A DNA stretch of 64,000 nucleotides from Obrimoposthia wandeli (taxonomy: Eukaryota): positions 1,364,001 through 1,428,000 of the forward strand of contig CDROCS010000506.1 in assembly GCA_977020255.1 (NCBI GenBank). The letters are read 5' to 3'. The position numbers were made by a program, and so were the translations under genes. This document shows positions 946-23,713 of this stretch, one piece after another (the stretch's first letter is position 1; the number at the start of each line of letters is the position of its first letter). The notes under the pieces were generated by a model. That model was not told the origin of the DNA and searched no databases. It worked only from the letters and a program-made list of their open reading frames with translations.

Positions 946-1056
946 TTATAGACCTTTCATTTAAATTTTTACATTGTTGAATATATATAGCTTTATTTAA
1001 ATATTTTATTTAGATTACAAATCACACGAAAATTGCATTAAAAACACCGCTAGCAG

Positions 1057-1588: not shown

Positions 1589-2926
<1,338 letters not shown>

Positions 2927-2930
2927 CGTC

Positions 2931-4146: not shown

Positions 4147-4156
4147 GTTTGCCCTG

Positions 4157-4957: not shown

Positions 4958-4996
4958 ACACTCATTACCCTTAAATACTTATAATTATAAGATTAT

Positions 4997-7314: not shown

Positions 7315-7317
7315 TAG

Positions 7318-7971: not shown

Positions 7972-7979
7972 TAGATGCT

Positions 7980-8855: not shown

Positions 8856-8858
8856 AAA

Positions 8859-10076
8859 TTAGTTAACACTTAGCTTTAATGATATTAAATACACTCTAAA
8901 AATCATCGCAACATGAACAATTAAACTTAAAAAAGAAAACAAGATAATACCTAAATAAACATTGTTAAAATAACCGCCTACAGCATATGACAATATCGTT
9001 AGACTTAAAATCAAGATATTAAAATACAGCAACTCCTTTTGTTTTTCACCTATAACAAAAAGACTAAAGAATGGGGAGAATGATATTAAAGCAAACATGT
9101 AGGGTATTAGGCATTTTATTATATCTCCTGCTATTTTATATTCTTCACCAAACAAAAGCACTATAAAGAACTCAGAGAAAAAGTATGCAAGCACTGAAAT
9201 TACAAAGCCCATTATAATCGTTAATTTCAAATTTAAAAGTAAGTTATCTTTTGTTTTACTTCTATTATTGACAACGAGAGTAGTAAATAGCTGAGCTATC
9301 GTAGAAGAAAAAACTGAAATAGGACTTAATATTATCCTTAAACTAGCCCCATAAAACCCAGCCATTTCGCTAGAGTATAACTTTTCTATAATTATAGTTG
9401 GAGATCTAATAGTCAAAGAGTTAACCAGTTCTGCGACCATTTTCTGTAGAGGTAAATTCTTATACCTCTTTATGAACTGCCAGTGACCATTTAAGTTAAT
9501 GCTTTTAATTATAAAAAGTATACCTACGTTCCTTTGAATAAAGTACCAAAAGAAAAAGACAGATATAACAAAAAAACCATAGGCATTAATTTTGAGCATC
9601 ATTTCAGAGTTTAATAAATCATAAGTCGAATATAGAAAAAATATGGTCAGAGGGACTAAAAGCACAGCAAAACATTCCCAAATAGCAAGCTGTAATACCT
9701 TTTCATTAATTACAGCAAAGGTTCTGGCTAATACCTTAATCCCAGAAGAAAAAACAAAAATGCTAATCAATAGCGCATTATTTACTGATAAAATGGATAA
9801 AGAAAATAAAATGATTAAACTGGAAAGAAGAACATAAACCAGTACATTCCCGACAATAGAAGGACTATTATTTTTATCTTCATCAATATAAAGAGCTTGC
9901 TCATAAAATCCCGAACTCAAAATACTAATAACACCCGCGATGGATAAATAAACCATGTACTGACCGATTAGTTCAGGAGATACCACTTTAGTTACAAGAA
10001 GAAATCCAAGCATTGATAGCACTTGGGACAGGATATTGATAACTGTTATTGTGACTACATTGTTCAAAAAAAACAC
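8859..10076 (-). CDS. wzx: Oligosaccharide flippase
   Basis: About 12 hydrophobic segments, FIKRYKNLP and AGFYG motifs, polysaccharide-locus context. Confidence 0.82.
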   Translation of the reverse strand: MFFLNNVVTITVINILSQVLSMLGFLLVTKVVSPELIGQYMVYLSIAGVISILSSGFYEQALYIDEDKNNSPSIVGNVLVYVLLSSLIILFSLSILSVNNALLISIFVFSSGIKVLARTFAVINEKVLQLAIWECFAVLLVPLTIFFLYSTYDLLNSEMMLKINAYGFFVISVFFFWYFIQRNVGILFIIKSINLNGHWQFIKRYKNLPLQKMVAELVNSLTIRSPTIIIEKLYSSEMAGFYGASLRIILSPISVFSSTIAQLFTTLVVNNRSKTKDNLLLNLKLTIIMGFVISVLAYFFSEFFIVLLFGEEYKIAGDIIKCLIPYMFALISFSPFFSLFVIGEKQKELLYFNILILSLTILSYAVGGYFNNVYLGIILFSFLSLIVHVAMIFRVYLISLKLSVN

Positions 10077-10077
10077 C

Positions 10078-10764
10078 TTATAGTCTAGATTTTAGAAAAA
10101 AAGTCTTATTCTTCATTATTATTTCATGGCTCCAATTCCACCACTGTGACTCTTCTAAATCATTAATAACTTCATCGCTGAATCTTTTTTTCAAAAAACG
10201 AGCTGGGTTCCCAGCAACGATTGTATATTTTTCTACATCTTTTGTAACGATACTGCCAGCAGCAATCACAGCTCCCCGACCAATTTTCACCCCACTTAAT
10301 ATAACTGAATTAGAGCCAACCCAAACATCCTCTCCTATTTCAACATCGCCTTTACTTGACATATCAAGAGATACATTTCCATCAAACATATCACGAGACA
10401 TAAAATATATTGAGGCTCTGTCTAACCTATGATCACTATCTTGAATTGAAACATTCTGCCCAATAGCGGTAAAATTTCCAATTGTAATACGACTATTAAC
10501 TGAACTTAATATTGTTCCACTTCCAAAAATACAAACGTAGTCACCAATTAAAATGTTACCCATACAAACACATCTGTATAGTTTACATCTATTACCAACG
10601 CTATTAACGTATATATTTGATTCTACTATTTCAGTGCCTAATCCAATATCCCCACGTATTGATATATTGGATTTCAAATCAATTCTTCTTTGACTCAAGT
10701 TATAACGTAAATAGTAAAAAACTTTTTTACCTATTTTTCGAATAAAGTTCTTAACCATTATCAC
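10078..10764 (-). CDS. CatB/Vat-like LbH O-acetyltransferase
   Basis: IGNFTAIGQNV, IGEDVWVG, VTKDVEKYTIVAGNPARFLKKRF, QWW. Confidence 0.88.
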   Translation of the reverse strand: MIMVKNFIRKIGKKVFYYLRYNLSQRRIDLKSNISIRGDIGLGTEIVESNIYVNSVGNRCKLYRCVCMGNILIGDYVCIFGSGTILSSVNSRITIGNFTAIGQNVSIQDSDHRLDRASIYFMSRDMFDGNVSLDMSSKGDVEIGEDVWVGSNSVILSGVKIGRGAVIAAGSIVTKDVEKYTIVAGNPARFLKKRFSDEVINDLEESQWWNWSHEIIMKNKTFFLKSRL

Positions 10765-12317
10765 ATATCTCCATCAGTGTTAAAATTTGATAAATATAAA
10801 TCAACAATGCTTTCAACATCCTGCTTAGTTTCTAAACTAATATTGGTTTGATTAAGTGCATGCTTTTCACTTTCAACCATCAATTTTAAAAATGATATTT
10901 TTTTACCACATTCAGTGATTGTTTTTAAATATGCAGCTTGAGAATAAATATTTTCTTGTTTGTAATTCTTAAAATCATTAATCAACAATGGTAAATCTTC
11001 AAATGATTTTACTTTCGTTACATTATCTAACACTTCAAAATATGCATTACCAAACATAAGAGATGGCTTTCCACAGAATGATGCTTCGAACGCGCTGGTA
11101 CCAGACAAAGTAATAACCCCTTTAGATTTTAATATCCATGGTTTCGGATCATTATAACAATCTAAACGAACCAATCTAACATTTGTTAATTTTTTCAATT
11201 GTCTGTAAAAGCTTAATGGGCGCTCTCCAATCATTGCACCATGTTCTTTTATATAAAGTTTCCAACCAACGGGAAGAGCCTTAGATACGGCTTCAATAAC
11301 TGATAGCTCATTTGGATAAAATGGTGATTTATTAAGAGTTGTTGATTCTGGAATTAGATGCAAAGGAAAATATACATAAGGTTCATCTTTATCTATAATA
11401 TTCTCAAAAAAATCACTACGATGACTTAATAAATATCGTTCTCTACTAAACCATAATACAAAAAACAATATAGATTTCATCGGGTTTGCCAAAGTAGGAA
11501 CATTCTTATTCCTATACCAAATAGGTATAGTAGGCATCAGATACCTCACAGCTCCGATTAGTCTTTTAATGTCTTTAATTATTGAATTAGATTTCTTTTT
11601 TGCTGTATTATTTAATTTATAACTATCAGCCATTATACTTTCCTTTTTTGAGAAAGCATTGACCTCTTCAATATACGATTCATCTATTTCAGCATTGTAA
11701 TTAAAGTTGTATTTTTCTACAAAATAATCATCCGTTTTTCGGCCTAGGTTATAAGTCGGTAATAAAATATCATTATAACGACTAAACTCTATTGAAACAT
11801 ATTTAACACCATGTATATTACATATTCTATGTAATATACTGCGACCAATTTCAGATATATCTACATCACAGACCATATCATAATCATTCTTTTCCACTAA
11901 TTCAATTAAATATTCAAAAAGCAATTGTATCCAATATAGCTTTTGAATTTCTGACATTGGTTTAAAAAAGAAACGATAATGATATTGAGTTGTAAATAAC
12001 TGAGATGATATTTGCAATAAGGATAGTGGTATATTTTCACAATATTTTTCTTCAAGATATGTCAAATAATCATAATCAATATGAGTATCAATATTTTTTA
12101 AATTTTTTGTATATGTATCAAAAACACTTGAAAATGTATGTACTAGTGTTTCTTTATTCATTTCGATAAATGTTGTATAGCTAGGATCTTTTAATAAAAT
12201 CTCTGATGAATGAATAAATATAGCTTCTGTAGAATATCCTCTATCTAAAAATTCATTATTAATAAAGTTCATAGGATATGTGTAAGTTTCTTTACACACT
12301 AGCAATACTTTTTTCAT
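10761..12317 (-). CDS. Capsule_synth/KpsS-like protein, candidate nonulosonic-acid transferase
   Basis: C-terminal YVYFPLHLIPES, IKEHG, VITLSGTSAFEA motifs of the KpsS/Capsule_synth family; overlaps the pseI stop. Confidence 0.65.
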   Translation of the reverse strand: MKKVLLVCKETYTYPMNFINNEFLDRGYSTEAIFIHSSEILLKDPSYTTFIEMNKETLVHTFSSVFDTYTKNLKNIDTHIDYDYLTYLEEKYCENIPLSLLQISSQLFTTQYHYRFFFKPMSEIQKLYWIQLLFEYLIELVEKNDYDMVCDVDISEIGRSILHRICNIHGVKYVSIEFSRYNDILLPTYNLGRKTDDYFVEKYNFNYNAEIDESYIEEVNAFSKKESIMADSYKLNNTAKKKSNSIIKDIKRLIGAVRYLMPTIPIWYRNKNVPTLANPMKSILFFVLWFSRERYLLSHRSDFFENIIDKDEPYVYFPLHLIPESTTLNKSPFYPNELSVIEAVSKALPVGWKLYIKEHGAMIGERPLSFYRQLKKLTNVRLVRLDCYNDPKPWILKSKGVITLSGTSAFEASFCGKPSLMFGNAYFEVLDNVTKVKSFEDLPLLINDFKNYKQENIYSQAAYLKTITECGKKISFLKLMVESEKHALNQTNISLETKQDVESIVDLYLSNFNTDGDM

Positions 12318-13381
12318 ATTCGCGTCTTCTTTTTATATATTAACTTTTCACTTAGTGCTGTACCACATTGAATATTTTTAACGGCAGTACTACCAATTAC
12401 CTGCTCATAATATTTAGGAGCCAAGCCAAACCCAGGTCGAATGCTTCGTACATTATCCGCAGTAAATAATTCCCCTTCAGCAATGTCTTTTACCACGTAA
12501 AGAGAACGTCTGAACTTCACATTACCTTTTTCTGCATCTGTGCGTTCATAGTTAACCTTACCTAACGCTTGCCATGCGGTTTTACTGTCTTGACACAATT
12601 GCGCTAACTCTTTCGGCTCTAATGAAAACGTATCATCAACACCACCACCAGTTCTGTCTAATGTTACATGTTTTTCAATTAAACACGCACCAAGTACAAC
12701 CGATGCAACAGCAGTCGCATTATCAATAGTGTGGTCAGAAAGCCCTGACAATACATTGAATCGTGAAGATATGTCAGCTATCGTTCTTAAGTTATATTGG
12801 TCTGCTGGTGCCGGATAGCCACTTACGCAATGCAATACAACTAACTCTTTGCAACCATGCTTATAGGCTGTGTCAATAGCTTCTTGTATCTCTTCTTCAT
12901 TCGCCATGCCCGTCGACATAATCATCGGTTTACCCGTTTGTGCAACACGCGTAATTAAGGCTAAGTCAACCAGTTCAAATGAGGCTATTTTATACGCAGG
13001 GACATCTAATTTTTCAAGTAAATCAACAGCTGTAAAGTCAAATGGAGAACTAAATATCGTTATATCTAATTCTTTTGCCTTCTCAAATAAAGGTTTATGC
13101 CACTCCCATGGCATATGTGCGCCTTTATATAACTCATAAAGCGTTTGTCCATCCCATAGACCTCCTTTAATTTGGAAGTCTTGTTTATCGCAGTCAATTG
13201 TCAACGTATCATGAGTATACGTTTGTAATTTAATTGCATCCGCACCCGCCTTTTTAGCCTCCTCCATAATTTTAAAAGCGCGATTAATATCACCATTATG
13301 ATTAGCTGAAAGCTCTGCAATAATATACGGAGGGAAGTCTGGACCAATTTTACGGTCATTAATTGTAATATATGAATTCAT
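12314..13381 (-). CDS. pseI: Pseudaminic acid synthase (NeuB family)
   Basis: PYIIAELSANHNG, DAIKLQTY, KIASFE, GLSDHT, IEKH and C-terminal SAF domain (FRRSLYVV...RSIRPGFGL). Start set at ATG 13381, which overlaps the upstream TAA. Confidence 0.93.
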   Translation of the reverse strand: MNSYITINDRKIGPDFPPYIIAELSANHNGDINRAFKIMEEAKKAGADAIKLQTYTHDTLTIDCDKQDFQIKGGLWDGQTLYELYKGAHMPWEWHKPLFEKAKELDITIFSSPFDFTAVDLLEKLDVPAYKIASFELVDLALITRVAQTGKPMIMSTGMANEEEIQEAIDTAYKHGCKELVVLHCVSGYPAPADQYNLRTIADISSRFNVLSGLSDHTIDNATAVASVVLGACLIEKHVTLDRTGGGVDDTFSLEPKELAQLCQDSKTAWQALGKVNYERTDAEKGNVKFRRSLYVVKDIAEGELFTADNVRSIRPGFGLAPKYYEQVIGSTAVKNIQCGTALSEKLIYKKKTRI

Positions 13382-14028
13382 TATTCTTCTCTTGTTACTG
13401 TCACTGTATATTTTTTTCCATCTTGATAAAAATACGCAGGGAATCGATTTGGATCGCATACTCGAATCAAATTAAACTGTGATGCAATTGTACATGCAGG
13501 ATCTAATTCACTGTCTTCAGGTTTGCGCTGGCGATGATAAGGTGTTTTTTTATCTGTTATTTCTTGTGGCAATGCTTTGGTATTATCAATGTGTTCACAC
13601 GCCCAAGATATTAACGCGAGTTCAGCATTAAATAATAAATCATTAATCTCGTCATAGAGCTCAGAGCCAGTTAACGGTATTTTCTTTTTCTGCCAAACAT
13701 CACCCGTATCAACGCTGTCTTCAGCATTCAATAACGACAGTGTCAGCTCATTACGACCATTGACAATATCCCAAATATGGGGGCTCCAACCGCGTCCTTC
13801 AGGTAAATCACTCGCATGTAAAACCAACGTATAACGAAATTTAGCTCTATGCTCAGCTTTAATTATTTCTGAACACGAAATTAAGAATAAAATATCGCCG
13901 CTATTTTTCACTTCGCTGATACGGTTAATAAGCTCTATGTCATATATGCTATGATTCTCGTCAATCCAACGAGAAAGATAGTGATAAACAGGATGAGATG
14001 GATTCGAACATAAAAGTGTTATTTTCAT
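13381..14028 (-). CDS. Sugar N-formyltransferase (Fmt-like)
   Basis: LHASDLPEGRGWSP and VDTGD formyltransferase motifs, C-terminal LIRVCDPNRFPAYF; located between pseG and pseI. Confidence 0.85.
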   Translation of the reverse strand: MKITLLCSNPSHPVYHYLSRWIDENHSIYDIELINRISEVKNSGDILFLISCSEIIKAEHRAKFRYTLVLHASDLPEGRGWSPHIWDIVNGRNELTLSLLNAEDSVDTGDVWQKKKIPLTGSELYDEINDLLFNAELALISWACEHIDNTKALPQEITDKKTPYHRQRKPEDSELDPACTIASQFNLIRVCDPNRFPAYFYQDGKKYTVTVTREE

Positions 14029-14050: not shown

Positions 14051-15130
14051 TCATTGACATAGCTGCTCGATACGCTGAACAACACGCTTTGAACCCAAAC
14101 CATCACAGAGACTAAGGTTTACTTGCTTATACTCATCCCAACGTTCTAAAATACAATGATACGCAGGTAATAAGGTATTATTTAAATCGTTTAATTCGAC
14201 ACGTAATACCGCACCAACAGACTCTAATACAGCACATATTTGTTGTTGATTATCAGCCAAAGGGACTACGATTGAAGGTAACCCTAAACAAGCTCTCTCC
14301 CAAGAAGTTGAACCCGGCGCGCCAATCGATAAATCATGTTCGAGCATAAGCTCCGCCATCGTATGTGTAAACTCAATATGAGTGACCCAATCCTCTCGGC
14401 TCTGGCAAAATGCTTTCATTTTTTCGTAATGAGGAGAGCGCGTACTCAATAATACTGTTACTGATGGTTTCGATGGTAAACCCTCAAGACAGTGTAAAAC
14501 CTGTAAACTGGCGTTGGGGATATCAATGCCCCCCATACTAATTAACACCTTTGGCTTTTCAACATTTAGTTTTTTACCGGATGTTTGCGGCCTTAATTCA
14601 GCAAAACGTGGGGCTAATAGTGCAAATTGACAACCTGTTAACCGACGTTCAACTAGTGCAGTATTTTTAACGGTTAAAGTATACTCTGACGCTTCACGCG
14701 AAAAAGTTTGATCCAAAATAATATCAGCATGATGAACTCGAACGAGATCATCAATGGCCATAATATCGCACTGTAGTCGAGATTTAACTTGCTGCTCCCA
14801 TTGCTTATTGATCCCATAGTGGTCAATAATCATGAGGTCTACATTATCAATTAATTCAATGGTTTTTTCAGCATCTTCCTGTTCACTAACTTGTAACCAG
14901 GCTTTATAATCAGCGCTGTTTCTTGGTATCAAAGGAGATGAAGGTGATTGAAGTTTCATCACCTTAAATGACTGTTGAGAAATAAAGTCAGCCATATCAC
15001 CTTGCTGCTCTCGGCTAATAAAGCAGACATCATGTCCATTTTCTTTCAATGCTTTTGCTAAGACTAAGCACCGCATCACGTGGCCACTGCCAATATGAAT
15101 CGATGCATCAGCGCGAATAACGACTTTCAT
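14051..15130 (-). CDS. pseG: UDP-2,4-diacylamino-trideoxy-altropyranose hydrolase
   Basis: RADASIHIGSGHVMRCL, IIDHY, IDDL, ISMGG, GSTSWERACLGLP. Start set at ATG 15130. Confidence 0.92.
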   Translation of the reverse strand: MKVVIRADASIHIGSGHVMRCLVLAKALKENGHDVCFISREQQGDMADFISQQSFKVMKLQSPSSPLIPRNSADYKAWLQVSEQEDAEKTIELIDNVDLMIIDHYGINKQWEQQVKSRLQCDIMAIDDLVRVHHADIILDQTFSREASEYTLTVKNTALVERRLTGCQFALLAPRFAELRPQTSGKKLNVEKPKVLISMGGIDIPNASLQVLHCLEGLPSKPSVTVLLSTRSPHYEKMKAFCQSREDWVTHIEFTHTMAELMLEHDLSIGAPGSTSWERACLGLPSIVVPLADNQQQICAVLESVGAVLRVELNDLNNTLLPAYHCILERWDEYKQVNLSLCDGLGSKRVVQRIEQLCQ

Positions 15131-15918
15131 TACCAAGCTATCCACCCCCCATCCACATTTATATTTGTTCCATTTACAAATGAACTAGCTTGGCTTGCGA
15201 GAAATACAATAGGTCCTTTAATTTCTTCAGCTTTACCTACCCTACCCATTGGAACTTTATTTCCCAATAAAGTACTGAAAGCCAAGTTATTAGACTCAGA
15301 GTTCGGAAAAGGTCCTGGCGAAATAGCATTAAAACGAATACCTTGTTGGCCAAATTCACATGCACCATATTTAGTCCATTGGATAAGGGCCGCTTTTGCA
15401 GCACCGTAAAAGGGAGGATTAGAGCCTTCAGCACTTGCATACATATTCAAATCAGGACTAACACATCCATACATCGAAGCTATATTAATAATTGATGCAT
15501 AACCTTTATCTTGAACTGATTTTTTTAATAAAGATAAACAACATTGAAAGAGACTATTTGCAGATCTGACCGTAATATCATATGACAACATGAAATCTTC
15601 ATTATTTGAAGACTCAATAGTCCCACCTTTACCGTAATAAGCATTATTAACAATAACGTTCAAAGAACCTTCATAATTAGATAAAAATAATTTAATTTGC
15701 TCATCTTTCGTTACATCAAAATGTGCAGCTTTCGCATCATAGCCCAAATGCTGTAGATCAGAAACGAATGCATCTATATTATCTTTAGATCTTGAGTTAA
15801 CTAAAACTGTCGCGCCAGCTTCCCCTAGTCCTATACACATCTGTTTACCTAAATACCCAGTAGCCCCAGTGACTAACACTGACATACCAGCCATATCAAA
15901 TATTTTATTTTTCATCAT
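15130..15918 (-). CDS. SDR-family oxidoreductase (PtmA-like)
   Basis: VTGATGYLG, VNNAY, SMYG, YGAAK catalytic motif, VDGGW terminus. Confidence 0.9.
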   Translation of the reverse strand: MMKNKIFDMAGMSVLVTGATGYLGKQMCIGLGEAGATVLVNSRSKDNIDAFVSDLQHLGYDAKAAHFDVTKDEQIKLFLSNYEGSLNVIVNNAYYGKGGTIESSNNEDFMLSYDITVRSANSLFQCCLSLLKKSVQDKGYASIINIASMYGCVSPDLNMYASAEGSNPPFYGAAKAALIQWTKYGACEFGQQGIRFNAISPGPFPNSESNNLAFSTLLGNKVPMGRVGKAEEIKGPIVFLASQASSFVNGTNINVDGGWIAW

Positions 15919-17538
15919 TTATGACCACAAAGCAGGGTTAAGTAATCTATTATCAATTATATCTGGACGGTCGCTATCAATAACGTTTAATTCAGCCTCA
16001 GTAAATACATCAATTTTAATATCAATAATATTGTCTTTTAATTGACTGATATTTTCAGTTCCTAAAACTAGAGCGTCAACCCAAGATTTTGATTTAACGT
16101 ATTTAATTGCTAAAACTCTTATGTTTTCACACTTATACCGAATGCATATATCATTTAACCATTTCAAAATTAACTCTGATTTATCCCCTGCAATATTTAG
16201 CCAGATAGCACGATTATCAGTTAATAACAAACCTTGTAAAAATACACTTCTTACATGAATGGTTAGTTCTCTTTCTTCTTTTATTTTAATAATTTTAGGG
16301 ATCAATTCAAACCAACGATTATCTAAAATATTAAACGGTAGCTGAATAAAAGATACATCTGTATTTTCAAGCGCTAAAACCAATTCATCTGGTGATTGTA
16401 CTGATACGCCTAATCGCTGGATAACACCTTCTGACTTTATAGATAAAAGCGATTTTAAGACTTCACCATTATGGCTAATAAGATGTTCGGCCCTATGAAG
16501 CATTAATACATCAAGAGTATCTAGACCTAAGTTATGACAAGATTCAAGTACCGAATGACGCACAGACAAATCGATGAGTTCACGACTTGAATCGCCAGTT
16601 AGATGATTAAGTGGAGCTAGTTTAGTAATTATTTTAACTCTATTTTTCCAGCCATTACTTAACCATCTCCCAATTACTTGTTCACTATTACCATAAGCTC
16701 GAGCTGTATCTAAATAAGAAACACCTGAATGTACAGCTTCCGATAACATATTATTTGCCTGAATTTGACTAGGTTTCCCTTCCTTGTTATTTATTCCGTA
16801 ATCAAGTCCTAGTTGAACACAACCTAAAACTAATTCTGAAACTTCAGATGATACAAATAAATTATCTGCTGCTAATTTTTCTATCAACTCATACGTCGAA
16901 ATGGATTCAGGATTATTAATTCTACCAAAAAGTGACGTCATACGCATATAGTCATCAAAGCTATCAATAGTACATCGCAACGCAGAAAATTGATTACTAG
17001 TAAAAGCTCGGTAATACGTATCCCCATAATTTCTACGAATATAAGGTGTCACATGTTCTTGGTCAAACTGACTATCTGTATTTGAGTTTGCTTCTCTTAG
17101 CTTATCTAGTGTCGTAACTTCTAATGAAACGCCATATGGTAATCCCGACATTTCGCCATTAGCACAAACATAAACTGCTTTTTTTTGAATGAAAAATTCT
17201 ATCACATCATGAATAAAATTAGCATCCGGAAAAATATTATCGGCCGTTAATCTGACGATAACAGTCTCATCGGGATAATTAGTAAAAGCTGATATAAAAC
17301 GAGACAACACATTATCAAGATCCCCACGAAAGAAAGGGATTTCATTTTCATCAAGGATTCTACATAAGTGGTCATCAGTATGTTCCGTTGATGTGAGAAC
17401 TTTTACGTCATAGTTACTATTTTTTTTTGCTCGTTTAGCAGCAAGTACGGCTAATGGGTAACCCCCAATCGGCATCAAAACTTTTCCGGGTAAACGCGAA
17501 GAGTTCGTTCGAGCTTGAATCGCTACAACTACATTCAT
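15919..17538 (-). CDS. pseF: CMP-nonulosonate synthetase (SpsF/PseF-like) fused to an aldo-keto reductase
   Basis: N-terminal IQARTNSSRLPGKVL...VRLTADN...EHVTPYI; C-terminal LVLGCVQLGLDYG, LDTARAYG, IITKL, LMLHR, RSVFLQGLL. Confidence 0.85.
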   Translation of the reverse strand: MNVVVAIQARTNSSRLPGKVLMPIGGYPLAVLAAKRAKKNSNYDVKVLTSTEHTDDHLCRILDENEIPFFRGDLDNVLSRFISAFTNYPDETVIVRLTADNIFPDANFIHDVIEFFIQKKAVYVCANGEMSGLPYGVSLEVTTLDKLREANSNTDSQFDQEHVTPYIRRNYGDTYYRAFTSNQFSALRCTIDSFDDYMRMTSLFGRINNPESISTYELIEKLAADNLFVSSEVSELVLGCVQLGLDYGINNKEGKPSQIQANNMLSEAVHSGVSYLDTARAYGNSEQVIGRWLSNGWKNRVKIITKLAPLNHLTGDSSRELIDLSVRHSVLESCHNLGLDTLDVLMLHRAEHLISHNGEVLKSLLSIKSEGVIQRLGVSVQSPDELVLALENTDVSFIQLPFNILDNRWFELIPKIIKIKEERELTIHVRSVFLQGLLLTDNRAIWLNIAGDKSELILKWLNDICIRYKCENIRVLAIKYVKSKSWVDALVLGTENISQLKDNIIDIKIDVFTEAELNVIDSDRPDIIDNRLLNPALWS

Positions 17539-18692
17539 AATAGAATACGTGTTAACACAGCAACGACTTCATCTTGCTGTTGTACCGTCATTATATGGAA
17601 CAATGGTAATGATATCGCTTCTTGATAATAATGCTCTGAAGCAGGAAAATCACCGTGTTTAAAACCCATGTTTTTATAGTAAGGCTGCAGATGTACAGGA
17701 ATATAATGCAGGTTAACGCCTATACCATTTTCGCGTAATGCATTAAATACTTGAGGATGCGTCAGGTTAATTTTATCAAGCTGTAAACGGATCACATATA
17801 AATGTAAACCCGAGTATGTGTTATCTAACTGGAAAGGGATAACAACAGGTAGCTGAGCCAATAACGCATTATAACGCTTTGCTAAACGATGACGTGCAGC
17901 AACAAACTCAGCCAATCTCTGCATTTGCGATACACCCAGTGCTGCTTGTAACTCTGTCATGCGATAGTTAAAGCCAAGTTCAACCTGCTGATAATACCAA
18001 GCACCATCAGATTCGCCTTGCATCAATGCTGGGTCACGGGTAATACCATGACTACGAAACAGCGCCATTTTTTCCGCTAGATGATCACTATTAGTCAGTG
18101 CTGCACCGCCTTCCGCAGTAGTAACGATCTTAACCGGGTGGAAACTAAATACCGTGATATCAGAATATTGCCCAGCGCCAATTGTTGACTCTAAATAACG
18201 ACCACCAATAGCATGAGACGCGTCTTCGATGATGCTAAAACCATACTCGAGCGATAACGCATAGATAGCTTTCATATTACAAGGCTGGCCGCACAAGTGC
18301 ACTGCTACCAATACTTTAGGCAATTGCTGTTTTGTTTTAGCAATAACTAATTTTTTTTCTAATTCTATCGGGCACAGGTTATACGTCTGTGGATTGATAT
18401 CGACAAAATCTACTTTCGCACCACAGTATAATCCGCAGTTAGCGGATGCGACAAAAGTAACAGGTGTAGTCCAAAGAATATCATCCAGACCTAACCCCAA
18501 TGCTAAGCAAGCAATATGTAATGCAGAGGTTGCACTATTTACTGCTAACGCATGTTTAGCGCCAGTAAAATCGGTTAATGACTTTTCAAACGCCGGAACC
18601 TGAGGACCTTGCGTTAAAAAATCTGACTGTAGAACATCCACAACAGCAGTAATATCTGCCTGCGTTATTTCTTGCTTACCATATGGGATCAT
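17535..18692 (-). CDS. pseC: PLP-dependent sugar aminotransferase (DegT/DnrJ family)
   Basis: MIPYGKQ, LTQGP, NSATSALH, EDASHA, SFHPVK. Confidence 0.93.
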   Translation of the reverse strand: MIPYGKQEITQADITAVVDVLQSDFLTQGPQVPAFEKSLTDFTGAKHALAVNSATSALHIACLALGLGLDDILWTTPVTFVASANCGLYCGAKVDFVDINPQTYNLCPIELEKKLVIAKTKQQLPKVLVAVHLCGQPCNMKAIYALSLEYGFSIIEDASHAIGGRYLESTIGAGQYSDITVFSFHPVKIVTTAEGGAALTNSDHLAEKMALFRSHGITRDPALMQGESDGAWYYQQVELGFNYRMTELQAALGVSQMQRLAEFVAARHRLAKRYNALLAQLPVVIPFQLDNTYSGLHLYVIRLQLDKINLTHPQVFNALRENGIGVNLHYIPVHLQPYYKNMGFKHGDFPASEHYYQEAISLPLFHIMTVQQQDEVVAVLTRILL

Positions 18693-18700
18693 AATTTTAG

Positions 18701-19714
18701 TTATACCTTAAAGTTTGCATCAACATGTTCAACAATTAAGTCTCGTAAGCCTTCAACCGTTTCCCATTCTGTGTTAGTACCAGAATTATATTTAAAACCA
18801 AACGGTACTTTTGTTGCTTTATGATGATCAATATAATCTTGTTCTTGGTATGTGAATGATACTGATGGCAAAATTGCGTAATACGGGCCTAGATCAATGG
18901 TATTTAAAGAATCCGTATCCGTGATCATTTCTTCATGCAACTTTTCACCAGGGCGAATACCAACAACGCGTTGTTTACATTCAGGCGCAATCGCTTCAGC
19001 AACATCTAAAATTTTGTATGACGGGATCTTAGGAATGAATATTTCACCACCAATATGATTACCGATTGCAAACATAACTAAATTAACACCATCTTGTAAT
19101 GAGATGTTAAAACGTGTCATTTCTTCATGGGTGATCGGTAATAAACCTTCTTCTTTTTTATCCATGAAGAATGGAATCACAGAGCCACGAGAGCCCATCA
19201 CATTACCGTAACGTACAACACTAAATTTAATGTCTTTAGAACCTCGGATGTTATTTGCTGCTGCGAACAATTTATCCGATGCTAATTTAGTTGCGCCATA
19301 TAAATTAATCGGTGCACAGGCTTTATCAGTTGACAGTGCTACAACATCTTTAACTCCACAAGCCAGTGCGGCGTGAATTACATTTTCAGCGCCATCAATG
19401 TTTGTACGAATACATTCAGTTGGGTTATATTCAGCCGTATCAACTTGTTTAATTGCGGCAGCATGGATAATTACATCTACACCTTCACAGGCTTGCGTTA
19501 AACGATATTTATCGCGTACATCACCAATAAAAAAACGTAATTGTGGATAATCATACGCAGGATATTTTTGTTTAATCACGGATTGTTTTAATTCATCACG
19601 AGAGTAAATAATTATTTTTTTTACATCTGGATAACGATTTAAGATTGTTTCGATAAATTGCTTACCGAATGAACCAGTGCCACCAGTAATAAGTACTGTT
19701 TTGTTATTTAACAT
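18701..19714 (-). CDS. pseB: UDP-GlcNAc 4,6-dehydratase (inverting)
   Basis: ITGGTGSFG, YSRDELKQ, LSTDKAC, YGATKLASDK, RYGNV, RPGEKLHE. Confidence 0.95.
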   Translation of the reverse strand: MLNNKTVLITGGTGSFGKQFIETILNRYPDVKKIIIYSRDELKQSVIKQKYPAYDYPQLRFFIGDVRDKYRLTQACEGVDVIIHAAAIKQVDTAEYNPTECIRTNIDGAENVIHAALACGVKDVVALSTDKACAPINLYGATKLASDKLFAAANNIRGSKDIKFSVVRYGNVMGSRGSVIPFFMDKKEEGLLPITHEEMTRFNISLQDGVNLVMFAIGNHIGGEIFIPKIPSYKILDVAEAIAPECKQRVVGIRPGEKLHEEMITDTDSLNTIDLGPYYAILPSVSFTYQEQDYIDHHKATKVPFGFKYNSGTNTEWETVEGLRDLIVEHVDANFKV

Positions 19715-19786: not shown

Positions 19787-21973
19787 CTAAGACTTATCAC
19801 TCTCGTAGCTATAATTATAATAACCATACCCATAAGACGCACTAGCCTTCTTCTCAACCGCATTCAGAATAAAGCCTTTTACTTCAACCCCTGCCATTTC
19901 AAAGCGATGACGTGCAACTTCAATTTCTTTCACTGTATTTTGGCCAAAGCGACCAACCATCAAGGTTGTTCCCGCAAGCGTACCTATAATACTTGGATCT
20001 GTCACTGCAAGTACAGGCGGCGTATCAATTAGCACTAGGTCATATTGACTTGATGCCCATTCAACAAAATCAGCAAAGCGCGGATGCATTAATAATTCTG
20101 AAGGGTTTGGGGGGATTTGACCACGCGTAATAACATCTAGATTTTCAATACCTGATTTTTTAATTACATCTTTAGTTTCTAACTTGCCAGAAAGTATTTC
20201 TGACAAACCGCGGTCCCATTCAAGATTGAAGTGTCGTTGTAAATAACCTTTACGCATATCACCATCAACAATCAGTACTTTTTGACCTGTTTTCGCAATA
20301 ACTGCCGCGAAGTTAACAGATACAAATGATTTACCAATACTAGGTGCTGGTCCAGAGATCATTACCACATTATTCTTCGCTTCCATCATAGCAAAGTGCA
20401 TGCTGGTGCGTAGACCACGTAATGCTTCAATTGATAGATCCGCAGGATTTGATTCTGCTAATAATGTTTCATGCAATTCAAGTTTTTTCTTACGCTTATT
20501 TTGTTTAAGCTTGGAATCCATCTCAGCCTGCCAATCAGACATTGGGATGCTTGCATAAACAGGCAAACCTAATGCTTCAATTTCATCTGGGTTTTCAACG
20601 CCTTTATGTAACGCCGCACGTACTAGCACAACTGCAACTGAGAGCATTGCACCTAATAATGTCACGACGACCACAATCAGTGATTTCTTCGGTTTAACGG
20701 CTTGATTATAAGCTTGTGCTGAATCTAAGATACGTACATTACCAACAGTACCAGCTTTCAAAATACTTAGCTCTTGAACCTTATTCAGCAGTTGAATATA
20801 AATCTGCTGATTAACTTCGACATCACGAGTCATACGCAGTACCGCACGTTGTGTTTTAGGTAGTTTTTGCACTTGTTTATTTAAACGTTCTTTTTCACCG
20901 AATAATACCTGACGTTTATCTAATAATGATTTGTAAGCAGGATGGTCTTTGGTGAATTTTTGGCTAATATCACTTTCTTTAAAAGTTAATTGATTTAACT
21001 GTGCTTCTAACGCAACCATTACTTTCAAGGTCGATTGCGCTTCTAAACCCAAATCGATCGAATCATTATCTTGACGAAAACGATTAAGGATGTCTTCGGC
21101 TGCAGTTAGCTCAGCCTTAATATTTGGTAAATGTCCTTGTAAAAACGCTAAACTTTTTTCTGCTTCTGCAGAGTTACGCTCTACATTTTGTAAAAAATAA
21201 TTTTGGCTCACATTATTCAAGATATTTTGAATTAAAACTTTATCTTCACCACTGAATGACAATTCCAAAATGCCAGTTTGCATACCGCGTTCACTCACCG
21301 ATAAACCAGCTTGTAACCATTGTATAGCATTGAATGAAGAGCGTTTCACAACAGAGAATTCATCCGACGTTTTACCCACTAATGCCTGTACAAATAAACG
21401 GTAACCATTGCTTTGAGCTAATTCACCTGTAACACCCGATAATACTTTACGCTCATCACCATCATATAATGAATAAGCACCTTTACTCGCATCATCAATA
21501 ATTAAACTAAATACAGGTGATGCATAACTTGGCATTTCAAAACGGCTAATAGTAATGTCATTTTTTTGGCCGCTCATACGTGCTAAACCTTTACCTATAT
21601 AAGGTAGATATTTAGGTGTAGCTAGCGTGGTTAAATTTAACTTTTCAACCGTTTGACTTAAGATCATCCGTGATTTAATGATCTCAACTTCGGTCGTTGC
21701 CGAAGACTCACTTGAAAACATATCCCCCATGTCACCAACAAGCGCTGACATACCCCTGTTTTTTTGTTCAACTTGAATTAACGCATCGGCTTTATATACT
21801 GGCGTTGCCAATAGCGCATAGCTAACACCAATTACCGCAAAGATAAAAGTAACGGCAATAATGCTCCAACGTGCATCGAGTAATATACCGAATAGTTTAC
21901 TTAAATCGATTTCGTCAGCGTCGCCGTTTGACTGCTGTGGTTTATCCGTTTGACTAAGAGTATTACTGCTCAT
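19787..21973 (-). CDS. wzc: BY-kinase / chain-length regulator
   Basis: Two TM segments, Walker A GPAPSIGKS, IDTPP, C-terminal YGYGYYNYSY tyrosine cluster. Confidence 0.96.
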   Translation of the reverse strand: MSSNTLSQTDKPQQSNGDADEIDLSKLFGILLDARWSIIAVTFIFAVIGVSYALLATPVYKADALIQVEQKNRGMSALVGDMGDMFSSESSATTEVEIIKSRMILSQTVEKLNLTTLATPKYLPYIGKGLARMSGQKNDITISRFEMPSYASPVFSLIIDDASKGAYSLYDGDERKVLSGVTGELAQSNGYRLFVQALVGKTSDEFSVVKRSSFNAIQWLQAGLSVSERGMQTGILELSFSGEDKVLIQNILNNVSQNYFLQNVERNSAEAEKSLAFLQGHLPNIKAELTAAEDILNRFRQDNDSIDLGLEAQSTLKVMVALEAQLNQLTFKESDISQKFTKDHPAYKSLLDKRQVLFGEKERLNKQVQKLPKTQRAVLRMTRDVEVNQQIYIQLLNKVQELSILKAGTVGNVRILDSAQAYNQAVKPKKSLIVVVVTLLGAMLSVAVVLVRAALHKGVENPDEIEALGLPVYASIPMSDWQAEMDSKLKQNKRKKKLELHETLLAESNPADLSIEALRGLRTSMHFAMMEAKNNVVMISGPAPSIGKSFVSVNFAAVIAKTGQKVLIVDGDMRKGYLQRHFNLEWDRGLSEILSGKLETKDVIKKSGIENLDVITRGQIPPNPSELLMHPRFADFVEWASSQYDLVLIDTPPVLAVTDPSIIGTLAGTTLMVGRFGQNTVKEIEVARHRFEMAGVEVKGFILNAVEKKASASYGYGYYNYSYESDKS

Positions 21974-22073
21974 AATTATTATCTAATTCCAATATTTAAA
22001 TTTAGCTAGTGTCTATTTACCCAGCTGCTTTAGCTTAGCTCTATCAACTTAACTTCTATTAACCTAATTGTTC

Positions 22074-22505
22074 TTAGCTTAACTTCAGCGCCCAAGTCTT
22101 TGCAGAAGCTTCAATGAGTTTGTAAGCATGATCGAACGCTTCTTTACTTTGGCGATACGGATCAGGAATATCTTGTTTTTGTAACCATTGGCTAAACAAC
22201 ATGGTTTTACCACGTGCTTCAGGGGCTATGTTAGTCACCGCATTGATATGACCTTGTTCCATCACTAAAATCAAATCAAACTCACGACATAATGCAGACG
22301 TTAATTGACGACCTTGATGGCCAATCAAACTAATGCCATTTTCTTCCGCTACCTGACAAGCCAGTTTATCCGCAGGCTTACCGACAAGTGCGCCAACACC
22401 AGCAGATTCAACATTTTTATTTGGCAATAACGATTTAAGTAAATACTCGCCAGATGGTGAGCGGCAAATATTCCCCACACACACAACTAAAATATTATTA
22501 AACAT
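22074..22505 (-). CDS. wzb: Low-molecular-weight protein tyrosine phosphatase
   Basis: CVGNICRS P-loop and IPDPY; ATG at 22505 overlaps the wza stop. Confidence 0.96.
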   Translation of the reverse strand: MFNNILVVCVGNICRSPSGEYLLKSLLPNKNVESAGVGALVGKPADKLACQVAEENGISLIGHQGRQLTSALCREFDLILVMEQGHINAVTNIAPEARGKTMLFSQWLQKQDIPDPYRQSKEAFDHAYKLIEASAKTWALKLS

Positions 22506-23713
22506 TACCAAGCCCTTACATTATTGATGCCTTCGGACAGTTGGTTAAATCCTGTTATTGTTGGTAATATCTGACCGATAACACGGTTCCAACGGGTAAT
22601 TGGTGCAGCTGTTACATAAACTATGTCATAAGGTTGTAATTCAAATTCTGTACCTATAACCAAGGCTGCGGCATTGCTTATATCGAGTTGATAAATGTCA
22701 GCAATAGTATTTGTACTGTCTTTTAATTCAGCTTTTGACTCAGTCGCCGATTCAGCATTGTCTATATCAACAGCACGGTTAGCACGTACAACAAAGATAC
22801 CGGTCGCATCTGCTGCTAACTGGTTAATACCGCCAACACTGCTTAATGCTTCCGTTAGGCTCATCCCTGCACGGTCAATTTTTAATAATTTAGGTTCGTT
22901 AACTTCACCCATGACAAATACTTTTTGGCCATCGTTACGTGGCACGTGAACAATATCACCCGGCATTAATAAACGGTTTTGAGTTAAATCACCACGTTGC
23001 ATCAAGGCGTATAACGACAGTGCTTGTTCGGAACCTTGACGAGTGAGAGTGACATTACGCCAATCAGCTTCTTCCGCTAAACCACCCGCACTGTTGATTG
23101 CATCAAGTACTGTTAGTGGCACGTTGGTAATAAACTGTTGACCAGGTTTATCTACTTCACCTGTTATGTAAGTTTTTTTAGAGCGGAATGCCGCAACATT
23201 GACGTCTACTTGTGGGGTTTCGATAAACTTGGCTAATTTTTTCGTTAACATAGCGCGAATTTCAACTACCGTTTTATCTGCAACTTGAACAAAGCCGATA
23301 TAAGGATAGAAAATGCTACCGTCTGCGTGTACCCAGTTACCTGATTCACTGGCACTGCGGTAAGAACCTGCTGGAATAGTTAATTCAGGGTGGTCCCAAA
23401 TGGTCACATTTAAAATATCACCGGCACCTACGCGGTATTCATACGCCGCTAGCTTGGCATCTAATGCAGGATTAACTTGTGCACTTTGGCGCGGCGCTTT
23501 ATAGGCCGCCATTTTGTCTGCAGTTAATGGATATAGATTAACGCGATCTAAAATATCAACATTTTCTGAACTATTACCGTTATTATTATCATTATTTTCA
23601 GATTTATCGTCTATATTTAAACTATCTACATTTAAATAGCTGCCAGGTACTGTACAACCGGCTAGTATTATAGGTAAGGCCGCAGCCACCAATAATTTTT
23701 TATAATGATTCAT
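22505..23713 (-). CDS. wza: Outer-membrane polysaccharide export lipoprotein
   Basis: Lipobox LAGC, YRVGAGDILNVTIWDHPEL, SLBB domains, C-terminal amphipathic helix. Confidence 0.96.
   Translation of the reverse strand: MNHYKKLLVAAALPIILAGCTVPGSYLNVDSLNIDDKSENNDNNNGNSSENVDILDRVNLYPLTADKMAAYKAPRQSAQVNPALDAKLAAYEYRVGAGDILNVTIWDHPELTIPAGSYRSASESGNWVHADGSIFYPYIGFVQVADKTVVEIRAMLTKKLAKFIETPQVDVNVAAFRSKKTYITGEVDKPGQQFITNVPLTVLDAINSAGGLAEEADWRNVTLTRQGSEQALSLYALMQRGDLTQNRLLMPGDIVHVPRNDGQKVFVMGEVNEPKLLKIDRAGMSLTEALSSVGGINQLAADATGIFVVRANRAVDIDNAESATESKAELKDSTNTIADIYQLDISNAAALVIGTEFELQPYDIVYVTAAPITRWNRVIGQILPTITGFNQLSEGINNVRAW

What the first reader, a model, noticed from the sequence alone, without database searches (positions are those of the whole stretch)
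15130..17538. PseF fused to an aldo-keto reductase plus an adjacent SDR: possible redox epimerase pair making a non-canonical nonulosonic acid
Seen: the CMP-synthetase carries a full C-terminal AKR domain with Asp/Tyr/Lys/His tetrad-like residues (LDTA, AYG, ITKL, LHR), followed directly by an SDR with an intact YxxxK. Neither is needed for canonical Pse synthesis. Known: in Acinetobacter capsule loci, extra oxidoreductases beside nonulosonate genes accompany epimeric sugars (8-epi-legionaminic, acinetaminic, 8-epi-pseudaminic acids). Inference: oxidation and re-reduction of a CMP-sugar hydroxyl (e.g. C8), channelled by the fusion. Combined with the formyltransferase, this could give a formylated epimer that I do not recall being described.
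Basis: partly seen in the sequence, partly recalled or inferred. Interest (0 to 1): 0.72.

Follow-up and report, generated by a model that had tools for sequence, protein, structure and literature searches.

The report
Pseudaminic acid 8-epimerase module (EpaA/EpaB type)
A capsule gene cluster of a marine-type bacterium carries, in place of the usual pseudaminic-acid activating enzyme, a fused activating-enzyme/reductase and a partner dehydrogenase. These have the same build as the EpaA/EpaB pair shown in 2025 to turn pseudaminic acid into its 8-epimer, so this is a new example of a recently described system, not a new kind.

Summary
ORF 15919-17538 (-) encodes a 539-aa protein with an N-terminal CTP_transf_3 cytidylyltransferase and a complete C-terminal aldo-keto reductase, whose D277/Y282/K306/H348 tetrad is invariant in 62 homologues. 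ORF 15130-15918 (-) follows with no gap and is a classical SDR with an intact Ser-Tyr-Lys set.

The two genes lie in one translationally coupled operon: wza-wzb-wzc-pseB-pseC-fusion-SDR-pseG-formyltransferase-like-pseI. I found no other cytidylyltransferase in the 64-kb window.

The same architecture is published:
- EpaA (542 aa) and EpaB (262 aa), carried on A. baumannii prophages, convert Pse5Ac7Ac to 8-epi-Pse5Ac7Ac. This was shown by NMR (PMC12053666).
- A 2026 preprint reports K locus KL264, where epaC-epaD replace psaC (PseF).

I found the operon order pseB-pseC-fusion-SDR-pseG-(pseH or formyltransferase)-pseI in dozens of species. A PseF-like gene lay within 10 kb in only 2 of 48 such loci.

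Three cautions apply. The system is already known. The transferase domain is SpsF-type, not a PseF orthologue. The product here, probably CMP-8-epi-Pse, possibly 7-N-formylated, is inferred and not shown. I could not retrieve the EpaA/EpaB sequences for a direct comparison.

The parts
19787..23713 (-). wza (22505-23713), wzb (22074-22511) and wzc (19787-21973): capsule export and tyrosine-kinase genes at the head of the locus
   Evidence: NCBIfam: Wzc PRK11519 at E 3.4e-269; polysaccharide export protein PRK15078 at E 1.4e-178. Wzb is assigned from blastp matches of 42-49% to the small ORF between wza and wzc in loci L002, L012 and L018; the corresponding gene in L081 and L099 carries Pfam LMWPc.
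18701..19714 (-). pseB (UDP-GlcNAc 4,6-dehydratase, inverting)
   Evidence: NCBIfam TIGR03589 at 543 bits, cut-off 408
17535..18692 (-). pseC (aminotransferase)
   Evidence: NCBIfam TIGR03588 at 548 bits, cut-off 423. Its stop overlaps the fusion start by ATGA.
16846..17538 (-). N-terminal cytidylyltransferase domain of the fusion (residues 1-231). It is SpsF/COG1861-type and sits in the PseF slot.
   Evidence: Pfam CTP_transf_3 at E 1.1e-20. PDB 6oew at E 4.7e-23 and TM 0.84. No TIGR03584 hit. Invariant residues in 62 homologues: Q8, R10, S13, R15, P17, K19, D100, N101, E161-P165 and D192.
15973..16833 (-). C-terminal aldo-keto reductase domain of the fusion (residues 236-522)
   Evidence: Pfam Aldo_ket_red at E 1.2e-32 with near-full model coverage. 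Tetrad D277/Y282/K306/H348 invariant. Foldseek matches AKR11, Tas, AKRtyl and DepB-type barrels.
15130..15918 (-). EpaB/EpaD-like classical SDR (262 aa)
   Evidence: Pfam adh_short_C2 at E 3.8e-38. R43, S148, Y171 and K175 are conserved in at least 95% of 75 family members. It is 52.5% identical to the SDR that follows the fusion in an Acinetobacter K locus.
14051..15145 (-). pseG (UDP-sugar hydrolase); the likely true start is the ATG at 15130
   Evidence: NCBIfam TIGR03590 at 288 bits, cut-off 154. Junction TAATG.
13381..14028 (-). Formyltransferase-like protein (215 aa) in the pseH slot
   Evidence: Pfam Formyl_trans_N at E 2.5e-6, a partial match. NCBIfam fmt and ArnA-FT matches near E 1e-13. 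PDB 1zgh at E 1.5e-12. Homologues occupy the same slot in 7 of the 48 fusion loci; an eighth locus, L039, has a 30%-identical relative elsewhere. The His and Asp of the catalytic motifs are kept; the Asn two residues before the His is Val.
12314..13459 (-). pseI (pseudaminic acid synthase); the likely true start is the ATG at 13381
   Evidence: NCBIfam TIGR03586 at 527 bits, cut-off 340, matching from residue 43. The alignment to Acinetobacter PsaF begins at residue 27. Junction TAATG.
4157..12317 (-). Rest of the capsule unit genes: a 518-aa protein with no family match, three hexapeptide acyltransferases, a Wzx-like flippase, GT2 glycosyltransferases and a 312-aa protein with no family match
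   Evidence: The closest relative locus L105 is syntenic here.

Best explanation
The 539-aa fusion and the 262-aa SDR are an EpaA/EpaB-type (EpaC/EpaD-type) module built into a Wza-Wzb-Wzc capsule locus.

Proposed pathway:
- PseB, PseC, the formyltransferase-like enzyme (in place of PseH), PseG and PseI make a pseudaminic acid, probably Pse5Ac7Fo.
- One of the two NAD(P)-dependent oxidoreductases oxidises the C8 hydroxyl to a ketone. I favour the SDR for this step.
- The other returns hydride from the opposite face. I favour the AKR, as in the DepA/DepB epimerisation of deoxynivalenol. The result is the D-glycero-L-manno 8-epimer.
- The SpsF-type cytidylyltransferase domain fused to the AKR supplies the CMP activation that PseF normally provides. 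The locus has no PseF.
- The product would be CMP-8-epi-pseudaminic acid (probably 5-N-acetyl-7-N-formyl) for incorporation into capsule.

Shown here: domain architecture, catalytic residues, operon structure, absence of another cytidylyltransferase in the window, and strong conservation of this operon across species.

Shown by others, on same-architecture proteins: conversion of Pse to 8ePse.

Inferred: that this pair has the same stereochemical outcome, which enzyme oxidises and which reduces, the stage at which epimerisation occurs, and the formyl group.
For: - Architecture and catalytic residues.
- Published function of a pair with the same architecture and almost the same lengths: EpaA 542 aa and EpaB 262 aa, proven by NMR (PMC12053666).
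- An Acinetobacter K locus that fits this description was retrieved (L081/L082). The window proteins are 44.8% and 52.5% identical to its pair.
- Context, among 48 full-length fusion loci from species-representative genomes:
  - an SDR of this family lies beside the fusion in 45 and about 5 kb away in one more;
  - at least 2 pse genes lie within about 10 kb in 40, and all four in 30.
- A PseF-like ORF was found in only 2 of the 48 loci and nowhere in the 64-kb window.
- Genes are translationally coupled.
- Precedent for a dedicated transferase plus oxidase plus SDR reductase in C8 epimerisation: ElaABC for 8-epi-legionaminic acid (PMC13656337).
- Foldseek places the AKR domain near DepB-type AKRs. 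From my own knowledge, DepB is the stereo-inverting reductase in a two-enzyme epimerisation.
Against: - I could not retrieve EpaA or EpaB, so identity to the characterised proteins is unmeasured. The link runs through architecture and through the figures the preprint gives for EpaC/EpaD.
- At about 45% identity the stereochemical outcome need not be the same. The preprint itself leaves '8ePse5Ac7Ac or a novel isomer' open for KL264.
- In my tree the window lies in a Vibrio/Pseudoalteromonas/Kangiella clade, separate from the Acinetobacter K-locus clade. The position of EpaA in that tree is unknown.
- I found no organism with an in-locus module whose nonulosonate stereochemistry is known.
It could encode a canonical PseF, and I could not read it.
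- The formyltransferase-like protein lacks the canonical Asn of the N-x-H motif and is N-terminally short, so its acyl donor is uncertain.
Confidence: 0.65

Rival explanations
1. Same module, different outcome. The pair epimerises another position or yields another isomer (for example at C4, the only other free secondary hydroxyl of Pse). The product would then be a nonulosonate that is neither Pse nor 8ePse.
For: [quoted passage not shown] The window lies in a clade distinct from the Acinetobacter K-locus proteins. Identity to those proteins is only about 45%.
Against: The only experimental result for this architecture is C8 epimerisation. The related SDR AciE and the ElaABC system also act at C8. 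The catalytic and many other residues are invariant across the whole family, which suggests one conserved reaction.
Confidence: 0.17
2. The stage of epimerisation differs from the reader's model. The hydroxyl is inverted before CMP activation, either on free Pse or on the open-chain 2,4-diamino-2,4,6-trideoxy-L-altrose released by PseG (its C5 becomes C8). The fused transferase would then be a synthetase specific for 8ePse. This is a rival to the mechanism only, not to the identity of the module.
For: Both known 8-epimer modules bring their own transferase: ElaB replaces the usual legionaminic transferase, and EpaA carries one although its host has PsaC. A specialised transferase is needed only if the ordinary one rejects the 8-epimer. 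Its catalytic motifs are invariant. AKRs commonly act on open-chain sugars; this last point is from my own knowledge.
Against: Structural modelling of ElaA and ElaC places CMP-Leg and CMP-8-keto-Leg in the active sites. In A. baumannii, which has an active PsaC, 8ePse replaced Pse. That is easier to explain if CMP-Pse is the substrate.
Confidence: 0.45
3. The capsule contains ordinary pseudaminic acid. The transferase domain is simply an alternative PseF, and the AKR and SDR serve another role, such as a side-chain or acyl modification or a salvage reaction, or none.
For: No structural data exist for this organism. Pse (L-glycero-L-manno) derivatives, including Pse5Ac7Fo, are the forms reported from marine bacteria such as Pseudoalteromonas distincta.
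Against: Canonical Pse synthesis needs no redox step after PseC (established pathway). Two intact oxidoreductases are conserved next to each other, and translationally coupled within the pse operon, in dozens of species. A pair of the same architecture changes C8 in vivo.
Confidence: 0.1

Closest known systems
EpaA/EpaB of Acinetobacter baumannii prophages (Sharar et al., Commun Biol 2025; PMC12053666)
   Same: Same two-gene layout on one strand. The first gene is an N-terminal CTP_transf_3 plus C-terminal Aldo_ket_red fusion (542 aa there, 539 aa here). The second is an adh_short_C2 SDR of 262 aa in both. Both systems work alongside Pse biosynthesis genes.
   Different: EpaA/EpaB sit on prophages far from the K locus and act in trans in hosts that keep PsaC (PseF). 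Here the pair is chromosomal, lies inside the pse operon between pseC and pseG, and no PseF is present. Direct sequence identity could not be measured.
EpaC/EpaD of A. baumannii KL264 (bioRxiv 10.64898/2026.07.20.739706)
   Same: The pair replaces psaC (PseF) inside the psa module. The order is psaA-psaB-fusion-SDR-psaD-(acyltransferase)-psaF. The product is not determined experimentally in either case.
   Different: The window proteins are only 44.8% (fusion) and 52.5% (SDR) identical to the Acinetobacter K-locus pair that fits this description (L081). They lie in a different clade. The Acinetobacter locus has a PseH acetyltransferase where the window has a formyltransferase-like gene. The capsule export genes are co-directional here and divergent in Acinetobacter.
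ElaA/ElaB/ElaC, 8-epi-legionaminic acid module of KL49 (PMC13656337)
   Same: A dedicated cytidylyltransferase plus an oxidase plus an SDR reductase that together invert C8 of a 5,7-diacetamido nonulosonate through a keto intermediate.
   Different: The oxidase there is a Gfo/Idh/MocA enzyme, not an AKR. There are three separate proteins and no fusion. The substrate is legionaminic acid, not pseudaminic acid.
PseF (TIGR03584), the canonical CMP-pseudaminic acid synthetase
   Same: Same Pfam superfamily (CTP_transf_3), same position in the operon, and presumably the same CMP-transfer chemistry.
   Different: The domain does not hit the PseF equivalog model. It is closest to the SpsF-type Leptospira cytidylyltransferase 6oew, and it is fused to an AKR.
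DepA/DepB epimerisation of deoxynivalenol (from my own knowledge; DepB structure 8hwn appears among the Foldseek hits)
   Same: An AKR acts as the NADPH-dependent, stereo-inverting reductase of a ketone made by a separate dehydrogenase.
   Different: Unrelated substrate. The oxidase is a PQQ enzyme. Sequence identity is about 18%.

Membership tests
EpaA/EpaB-type 8-epipseudaminic acid module | First protein is an N-terminal CTP_transf_3 plus C-terminal Aldo_ket_red fusion of about 540 aa | tested here: met
   Pfam. Length 539 aa. Published description of EpaA read.
EpaA/EpaB-type 8-epipseudaminic acid module | Second protein is an adh_short_C2 SDR of about 262 aa, immediately downstream on the same strand | tested here: met
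   262 aa, with no gap after the fusion stop codon.
EpaA/EpaB-type 8-epipseudaminic acid module | Significant sequence identity to EpaA (SBS22546.1) and EpaB (SBS22545.1) themselves | not testable with these tools
   The sequences could not be retrieved: phage records, IMG/VR, plasmids and the word searches. Indirect evidence: 44.8% and 52.5% identity to an Acinetobacter K-locus pair that fits EpaC/EpaD, which the preprint puts at 42.5% and 56.7% to EpaA/EpaB.
EpaA/EpaB-type 8-epipseudaminic acid module | Occurs with genes that supply pseudaminic acid | tested here: met
   pseB, pseC, pseG and pseI all score above the NCBIfam equivalog cut-offs in the same operon.
EpaA/EpaB-type 8-epipseudaminic acid module | The product is the D-glycero-L-manno (8-epi) isomer | not testable with these tools
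   Needs NMR of the capsule sugar or an enzymatic assay.
EpaC/EpaD-type in-locus variant | The pair replaces PseF/PsaC between pseC and pseG, and no separate PseF is in the locus | tested here: met
   Gene order. An HMM of the transferase domain and a PseF-like query find no other cytidylyltransferase in the 64-kb window.
PseF (NCBIfam TIGR03584 equivalog) | Scores above the equivalog cut-off of 205.7 bits | tested here: not met
   No hit at E<=1e-3. As a control, the PseF-like ORF in L025 reaches 108 bits.
CMP-sugar synthetase fold (CTP_transf_3) | N-terminal Arg/Lys phosphate-binding loop and conserved acidic motifs | tested here: met
   R10, S13, R15, K19, D100, N101 and D192 are invariant in 62 sequences. 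Fold match to 6oew at TM 0.84. Assignment of these residues to catalytic roles is by analogy.
Aldo-keto reductase superfamily | Catalytic tetrad Asp-Tyr-Lys-His on a TIM barrel | tested here: met
   D277, Y282, K306 and H348 are invariant. The barrel is predicted at high confidence and matches AKR structures.
Classical SDR | Gly-rich dinucleotide motif, NNAG-type motif and catalytic Ser-Tyr-Lys | tested here: met
   G18/G21/G24, N91-N92-A93, S148, Y171 and K175. R43 is conserved after strand 2, which suggests NADP(H); that is an inference. The Ser-Tyr spacing is unusually long at 23 residues.
ElaABC (8-epi-legionaminic acid) system | Gfo/Idh/MocA oxidase ElaA | tested here: not met
   No Gfo/Idh/MocA family was among the Pfam or NCBIfam matches of the locus proteins scanned. 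The second oxidoreductase is an AKR. The system is an analogue, not a member.

The most novel reading that the evidence does not exclude
Three linked claims:
- The locus makes CMP-5-N-acetyl-7-N-formyl-8-epipseudaminic acid, a derivative I did not find described.
- The fused SpsF-type domain is a synthetase dedicated to the 8-epimer.
- The operon pseB-pseC-fusion-SDR-pseG-(pseH or formyltransferase)-pseI occurs, without PseF, in dozens of species across several phyla. So 8-epi-Pse, so far reported only from A. baumannii, would be a widespread capsule and O-antigen sugar, and many genome-based 'pseudaminic acid' calls would be wrong. The prophage epaA-epaB pair would be an excised copy of such an operon core.
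Probability: 0.35. Interest if true: 0.6.

Novelty: new member of a known kind. Interest (0 to 1): 0.4.

Why it matters
Nonulosonic acid stereochemistry decides how capsules are recognised by antibodies, by phage depolymerases and by host lectins.

If this module inverts C8 as EpaA/EpaB do, two things follow:
- Genome-based typing that calls 'Pse' from pseB, pseC, pseG and pseI alone would mislabel every locus of this type.
- 8-epi-Pse would be far more common than the two A. baumannii capsule types in which it has been reported.

The loss of PseF in these operons also makes one question testable: is the fused transferase specific for the 8-epimer? The answer would settle whether epimerisation comes before or after CMP activation.

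For this window alone, the finding is an additional, well-supported example of a system described in 2025-2026. It carries a formyltransferase-like gene that may add a new N-acyl variant.

Tried and rejected
Attempts to obtain EpaA/EpaB for a direct comparison, all unsuccessful:
- tblastn against phage records and plasmids.
- Two IMG/VR scans using different motifs.
- Word searches seeded with an Acinetobacter homologue and with the Acinetobacter K-locus SDR. Only the best 120 hits are listed, and these were all closer relatives than EpaA/EpaB would be.
- A cluster look-up of Acinetobacter hits.
- Two 542-aa candidates, P0078 and P0041, which turned out to be ordinary in-locus metagenomic copies.

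Other checks that led nowhere or were rejected:
- Chance adjacency of generic oxidoreductases: rejected on operon coupling and conserved synteny.
- A fusion created by a frameshift or assembly error: rejected, because the fusion is conserved as one ORF and folds as one confident two-domain model.
- The stand-alone AKR+SDR pairs in Rhizomicrobium and related genomes (L047-L080): in the one locus I scanned (L058) they sit beside patatin and thioesterase genes, not glycan genes. I excluded them from the statistics as a probable paralogous system.
- I looked for a strain with both this locus type and a determined nonulosonate structure. Pseudoalteromonas sp. Bsw20308 has the module, but I found no structure for it. 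The P. distincta KMM 638 structure, Pse5Ac7Fo, could not be tied to a genome.
- PHROGs gave only generic AKR and FabG-like families.
- Sequencing-run search: one run holds the locus, probably the source sample, and the organism name is coded. I did not lay reads.


Full report
**What is there.** On the minus strand the window carries a capsule locus. It starts with wza (22505-23713), wzb (22074-22511) and wzc (19787-21973). A pseudaminic-acid operon follows:
- pseB (18701-19714), TIGR03589 at 543 bits.
- pseC (17535-18692), TIGR03588 at 548 bits.
- A 539-aa ORF (15919-17538).
- A 262-aa ORF (15130-15918).
- pseG (14051-15145), TIGR03590 at 288 bits.
- A 215-aa formyltransferase-like ORF (13381-14028).
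- pseI (12314-13459), TIGR03586 at 527 bits.

Downstream lie a 518-aa protein with no family match, three hexapeptide acyltransferases, a Wzx-like protein and GT2 glycosyltransferases.

- The 539-aa protein has CTP_transf_3 at residues 5-231 (E 1.1e-20) and Aldo_ket_red at residues 236-522 over almost the whole model (E 1.2e-32).
All four are invariant in alignments of 14 and 62 homologues.
- The 262-aa protein is a classical SDR (adh_short_C2, E 3.8e-38). In an alignment of 75 SDRs found beside such fusions or AKRs, the glycine-rich motif, R43, N91-N92-A93, S148, Y171 and K175 are conserved in at least 95% of sequences. The Ser-Tyr spacing is unusually long at 23 residues.
- The gene junctions show translational coupling. 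pseC and the fusion overlap by ATGA. The fusion stop is followed at once by the SDR ATG. The SDR/pseG and formyltransferase/pseI junctions are both TAATG.
- AlphaFold2 models the fusion as one confident two-domain protein, with pLDDT 94.4 and pTM 0.87.

**One correction to the title.** The transferase domain is not a PseF orthologue. It gives no hit to the PseF equivalog TIGR03584. Its closest solved relative is the SpsF-type Leptospira cytidylyltransferase 6oew (E 4.7e-23; TM 0.84). It does, however, sit exactly where PseF (PsaC) sits in canonical loci. An HMM of this domain and a PseF-like query found no other cytidylyltransferase in the 64-kb window. Its phosphate-loop and acidic motifs (R10, S13, R15, K19, D100, N101, D192) are invariant in the family. 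It is therefore the only visible candidate for CMP activation in this locus.

**This is a known system.**
- Sharar et al. (Commun Biol 2025, PMC12053666) identified EpaA and EpaB on A. baumannii prophages. EpaA is 542 aa, with an N-terminal CTP_transf_3 and a C-terminal Aldo_ket_red. EpaB is 262 aa, adh_short_C2, and 41.5% identical to AciE.
- They showed by complementation and NMR that the pair converts Pse5Ac7Ac into 8-epi-Pse5Ac7Ac.
- A July 2026 preprint (10.64898/2026.07.20.739706) describes K locus KL264. [quoted passage not shown] - I retrieved an Acinetobacter K locus that fits this description (L081/L082). Its order is fkpA-wzc-wzb-wza, then gna-psaA-psaB-fusion(540 aa)-SDR(266 aa)-psaD-psaE-psaF.
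- The window fusion is 44.8% identical to that fusion, and the window SDR is 52.5% identical to that SDR.
- I could not obtain EpaA or EpaB themselves. The link to the characterised proteins therefore rests on architecture, length, context and the preprint's figures.

**How widespread and how conserved.**
- The word search found more than 2,400 relatives. The best 120 all carry both domains at 44-66% identity. They come from Vibrio, Pseudoalteromonas, Kangiella, Marinobacter, Halomonas, Acinetobacter, Pseudomonas, Chlorobium and Gallionellaceae. NCBI names them only 'aldo/keto reductase'.
- Of the 80 loci fetched, 48 hold a full-length fusion.
- By my reading of the listing, an SDR of this family lies beside the fusion in 45 of the 48 and about 5 kb away in one more (L062). 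The script missed four of these because long high-GC ORFs hid the SDR start.
- At least two pse genes lie within about 10 kb in 40 loci, and all four (pseB, pseC, pseG, pseI) in 30.
- The usual order is pseB-pseC-fusion-SDR-pseG-X-pseI. X is a PseH-type GNAT in 19 loci, or a PseH domain fused to PseG. X is a homologue of the window's formyltransferase-like protein in 7 loci; an eighth locus, L039, has a more distant relative elsewhere.
- A PseF-like ORF exists in only two of the 48 loci, L025 and L022.
- A few genomes, such as Bordetella genomosp. 13 (L023), carry the fusion+SDR pair alone among unrelated genes. This resembles the prophage pair, which acts in trans.
- The closest relative of the window fusion (P0001, 66%) sits in a locus syntenic with the window's, but with a PseG-PseH fusion instead of the formyltransferase-like gene (L105). 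The window locus therefore looks like an N-acyl variant of a shared capsule type.
- In a maximum-likelihood tree the window groups with the Vibrio, Pseudoalteromonas and Kangiella proteins (support 99), and the Colwellia MAG protein joins this group at lower support (91). This clade is apart from the Acinetobacter K-locus/Pseudomonas clade.

**Mechanism.**
- Canonical Pse synthesis has no redox step after PseC; this is the established pathway of PseB, C, H, G, I and F.
- Two intact NAD(P)-dependent oxidoreductases inside the operon are best explained as an oxidation/re-reduction epimerase.
- The 8-epi-legionaminic system is a precedent. ElaB is a dedicated CTP-transferase, ElaA (Gfo/Idh/MocA) oxidises C8, and the SDR ElaC returns the hydride from the other face. 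These steps were modelled on CMP-sugars (PMC13656337).
- Pse has only two free secondary hydroxyls, at C4 and C8. The one experiment on this architecture gives the C8 epimer.
- I therefore take C8 inversion as most likely.
- I tentatively assign the SDR as the dehydrogenase and the AKR as the ketoreductase. AKRs usually reduce with NADPH, and the fold search places the domain near DepB-type AKRs. From my own knowledge, DepB is the stereo-inverting reductase in deoxynivalenol epimerisation. The assignment is inference and could be the reverse.
- Both 8-epimer modules bring their own transferase, even where the host has PsaC. This argues that the transferase must be specific for the epimer, which would place epimerisation before activation. 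The reported replacement of Pse by 8ePse in a PsaC-positive host argues the other way.

**The formyltransferase-like gene.**
- It matches Formyl_trans_N only partially (E 2.5e-6), and fmt and ArnA-FT models at about 1e-13. Its best solved relative is 1zgh.
- It keeps the His of the H-x-S/T-x-L-P-x-G-R-G motif and the downstream Asp. The Asn two residues before the His is Val, and the N-terminus is short.
- It occupies the PseH slot, so it would acylate the hexose 4-amino group, which becomes N7 of Pse.
- Pse5Ac7Fo is a known natural sugar, found in P. distincta KMM 638 and P. aeruginosa. A Pse formyltransferase, PseJ, has been reported.
- A formylated 8-epimer did not appear in the library I searched.

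**Limits.**
- The organism name is coded. From the homologues, it is probably a marine gammaproteobacterium near Vibrionaceae.
A canonical PseF could lie there, and I could not read that region.
- No structural chemistry exists for any organism with the in-locus module.

**Verdict.** This is a new member of a known kind. The added points of interest are the consistent loss of PseF, the breadth of the family, and the formyltransferase-like partner.

Noticed in passing
window 10761-12317 (-): A 518-aa protein directly after pseI has no Pfam or NCBIfam match. It is conserved in the same position in L021 (52% identical) and in L105 (522 aa). It is a candidate nonulosonate transferase or polymerase specific to this capsule type.
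   Followed up: partly
window 13381-14028 (-): The formyltransferase-like protein in the pseH slot keeps the catalytic His and Asp but has Val where canonical formyltransferases have the Asn of N-x-H. It also lacks about 35-40 N-terminal residues of the fold. The same features are conserved in its homologues in other fusion loci.
   Followed up: partly
window 6712-7314, 7318-7971, 10078-10764 (-): Three separate hexapeptide-repeat acyltransferases (Vat/WbbJ-like) lie in one capsule locus. This suggests heavy O-acylation of the repeat unit.
   Followed up: no
L023:9977-12380 (Bordetella genomosp. 13): The fusion+SDR pair stands alone between CoA-transferase, HMGL-like, TctC and DUF72 genes, with no pse genes within 10 kb. 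It is a chromosomal counterpart of the trans-acting prophage pair.
   Followed up: partly
L047-L080 (Rhizomicrobium and other Alphaproteobacteria): A stand-alone AKR about 40% identical to the fusion's AKR domain is followed by an SDR about 40% identical to the window's in 31 of 32 loci. In the one locus scanned (L058), the pair sits beside thioesterase and patatin-like genes rather than glycan genes. It is probably a paralogous AKR+SDR pair with another substrate.
   Followed up: partly
L106:11459-15620 (Vibrio sp. 1262-1): This locus has the module plus pseG, a PseH GNAT, a 225-aa Formyl_trans_C_2 protein and a PIG-L deacetylase around pseI. That suggests deacetylation and re-acylation of one amino group.
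   Followed up: no
L045:10001-11620 (Colwelliaceae bacterium BS250): The transferase (227 aa) and AKR (318 aa) parts are separate ORFs here. This is either a natural split version or a frameshift.
   Followed up: no
window 1-4150: Only a few short ORFs of 96-109 aa lie here, and there are no Rfam matches. The stretch at the end of the capsule locus is unusually gene-poor.
   Followed up: no
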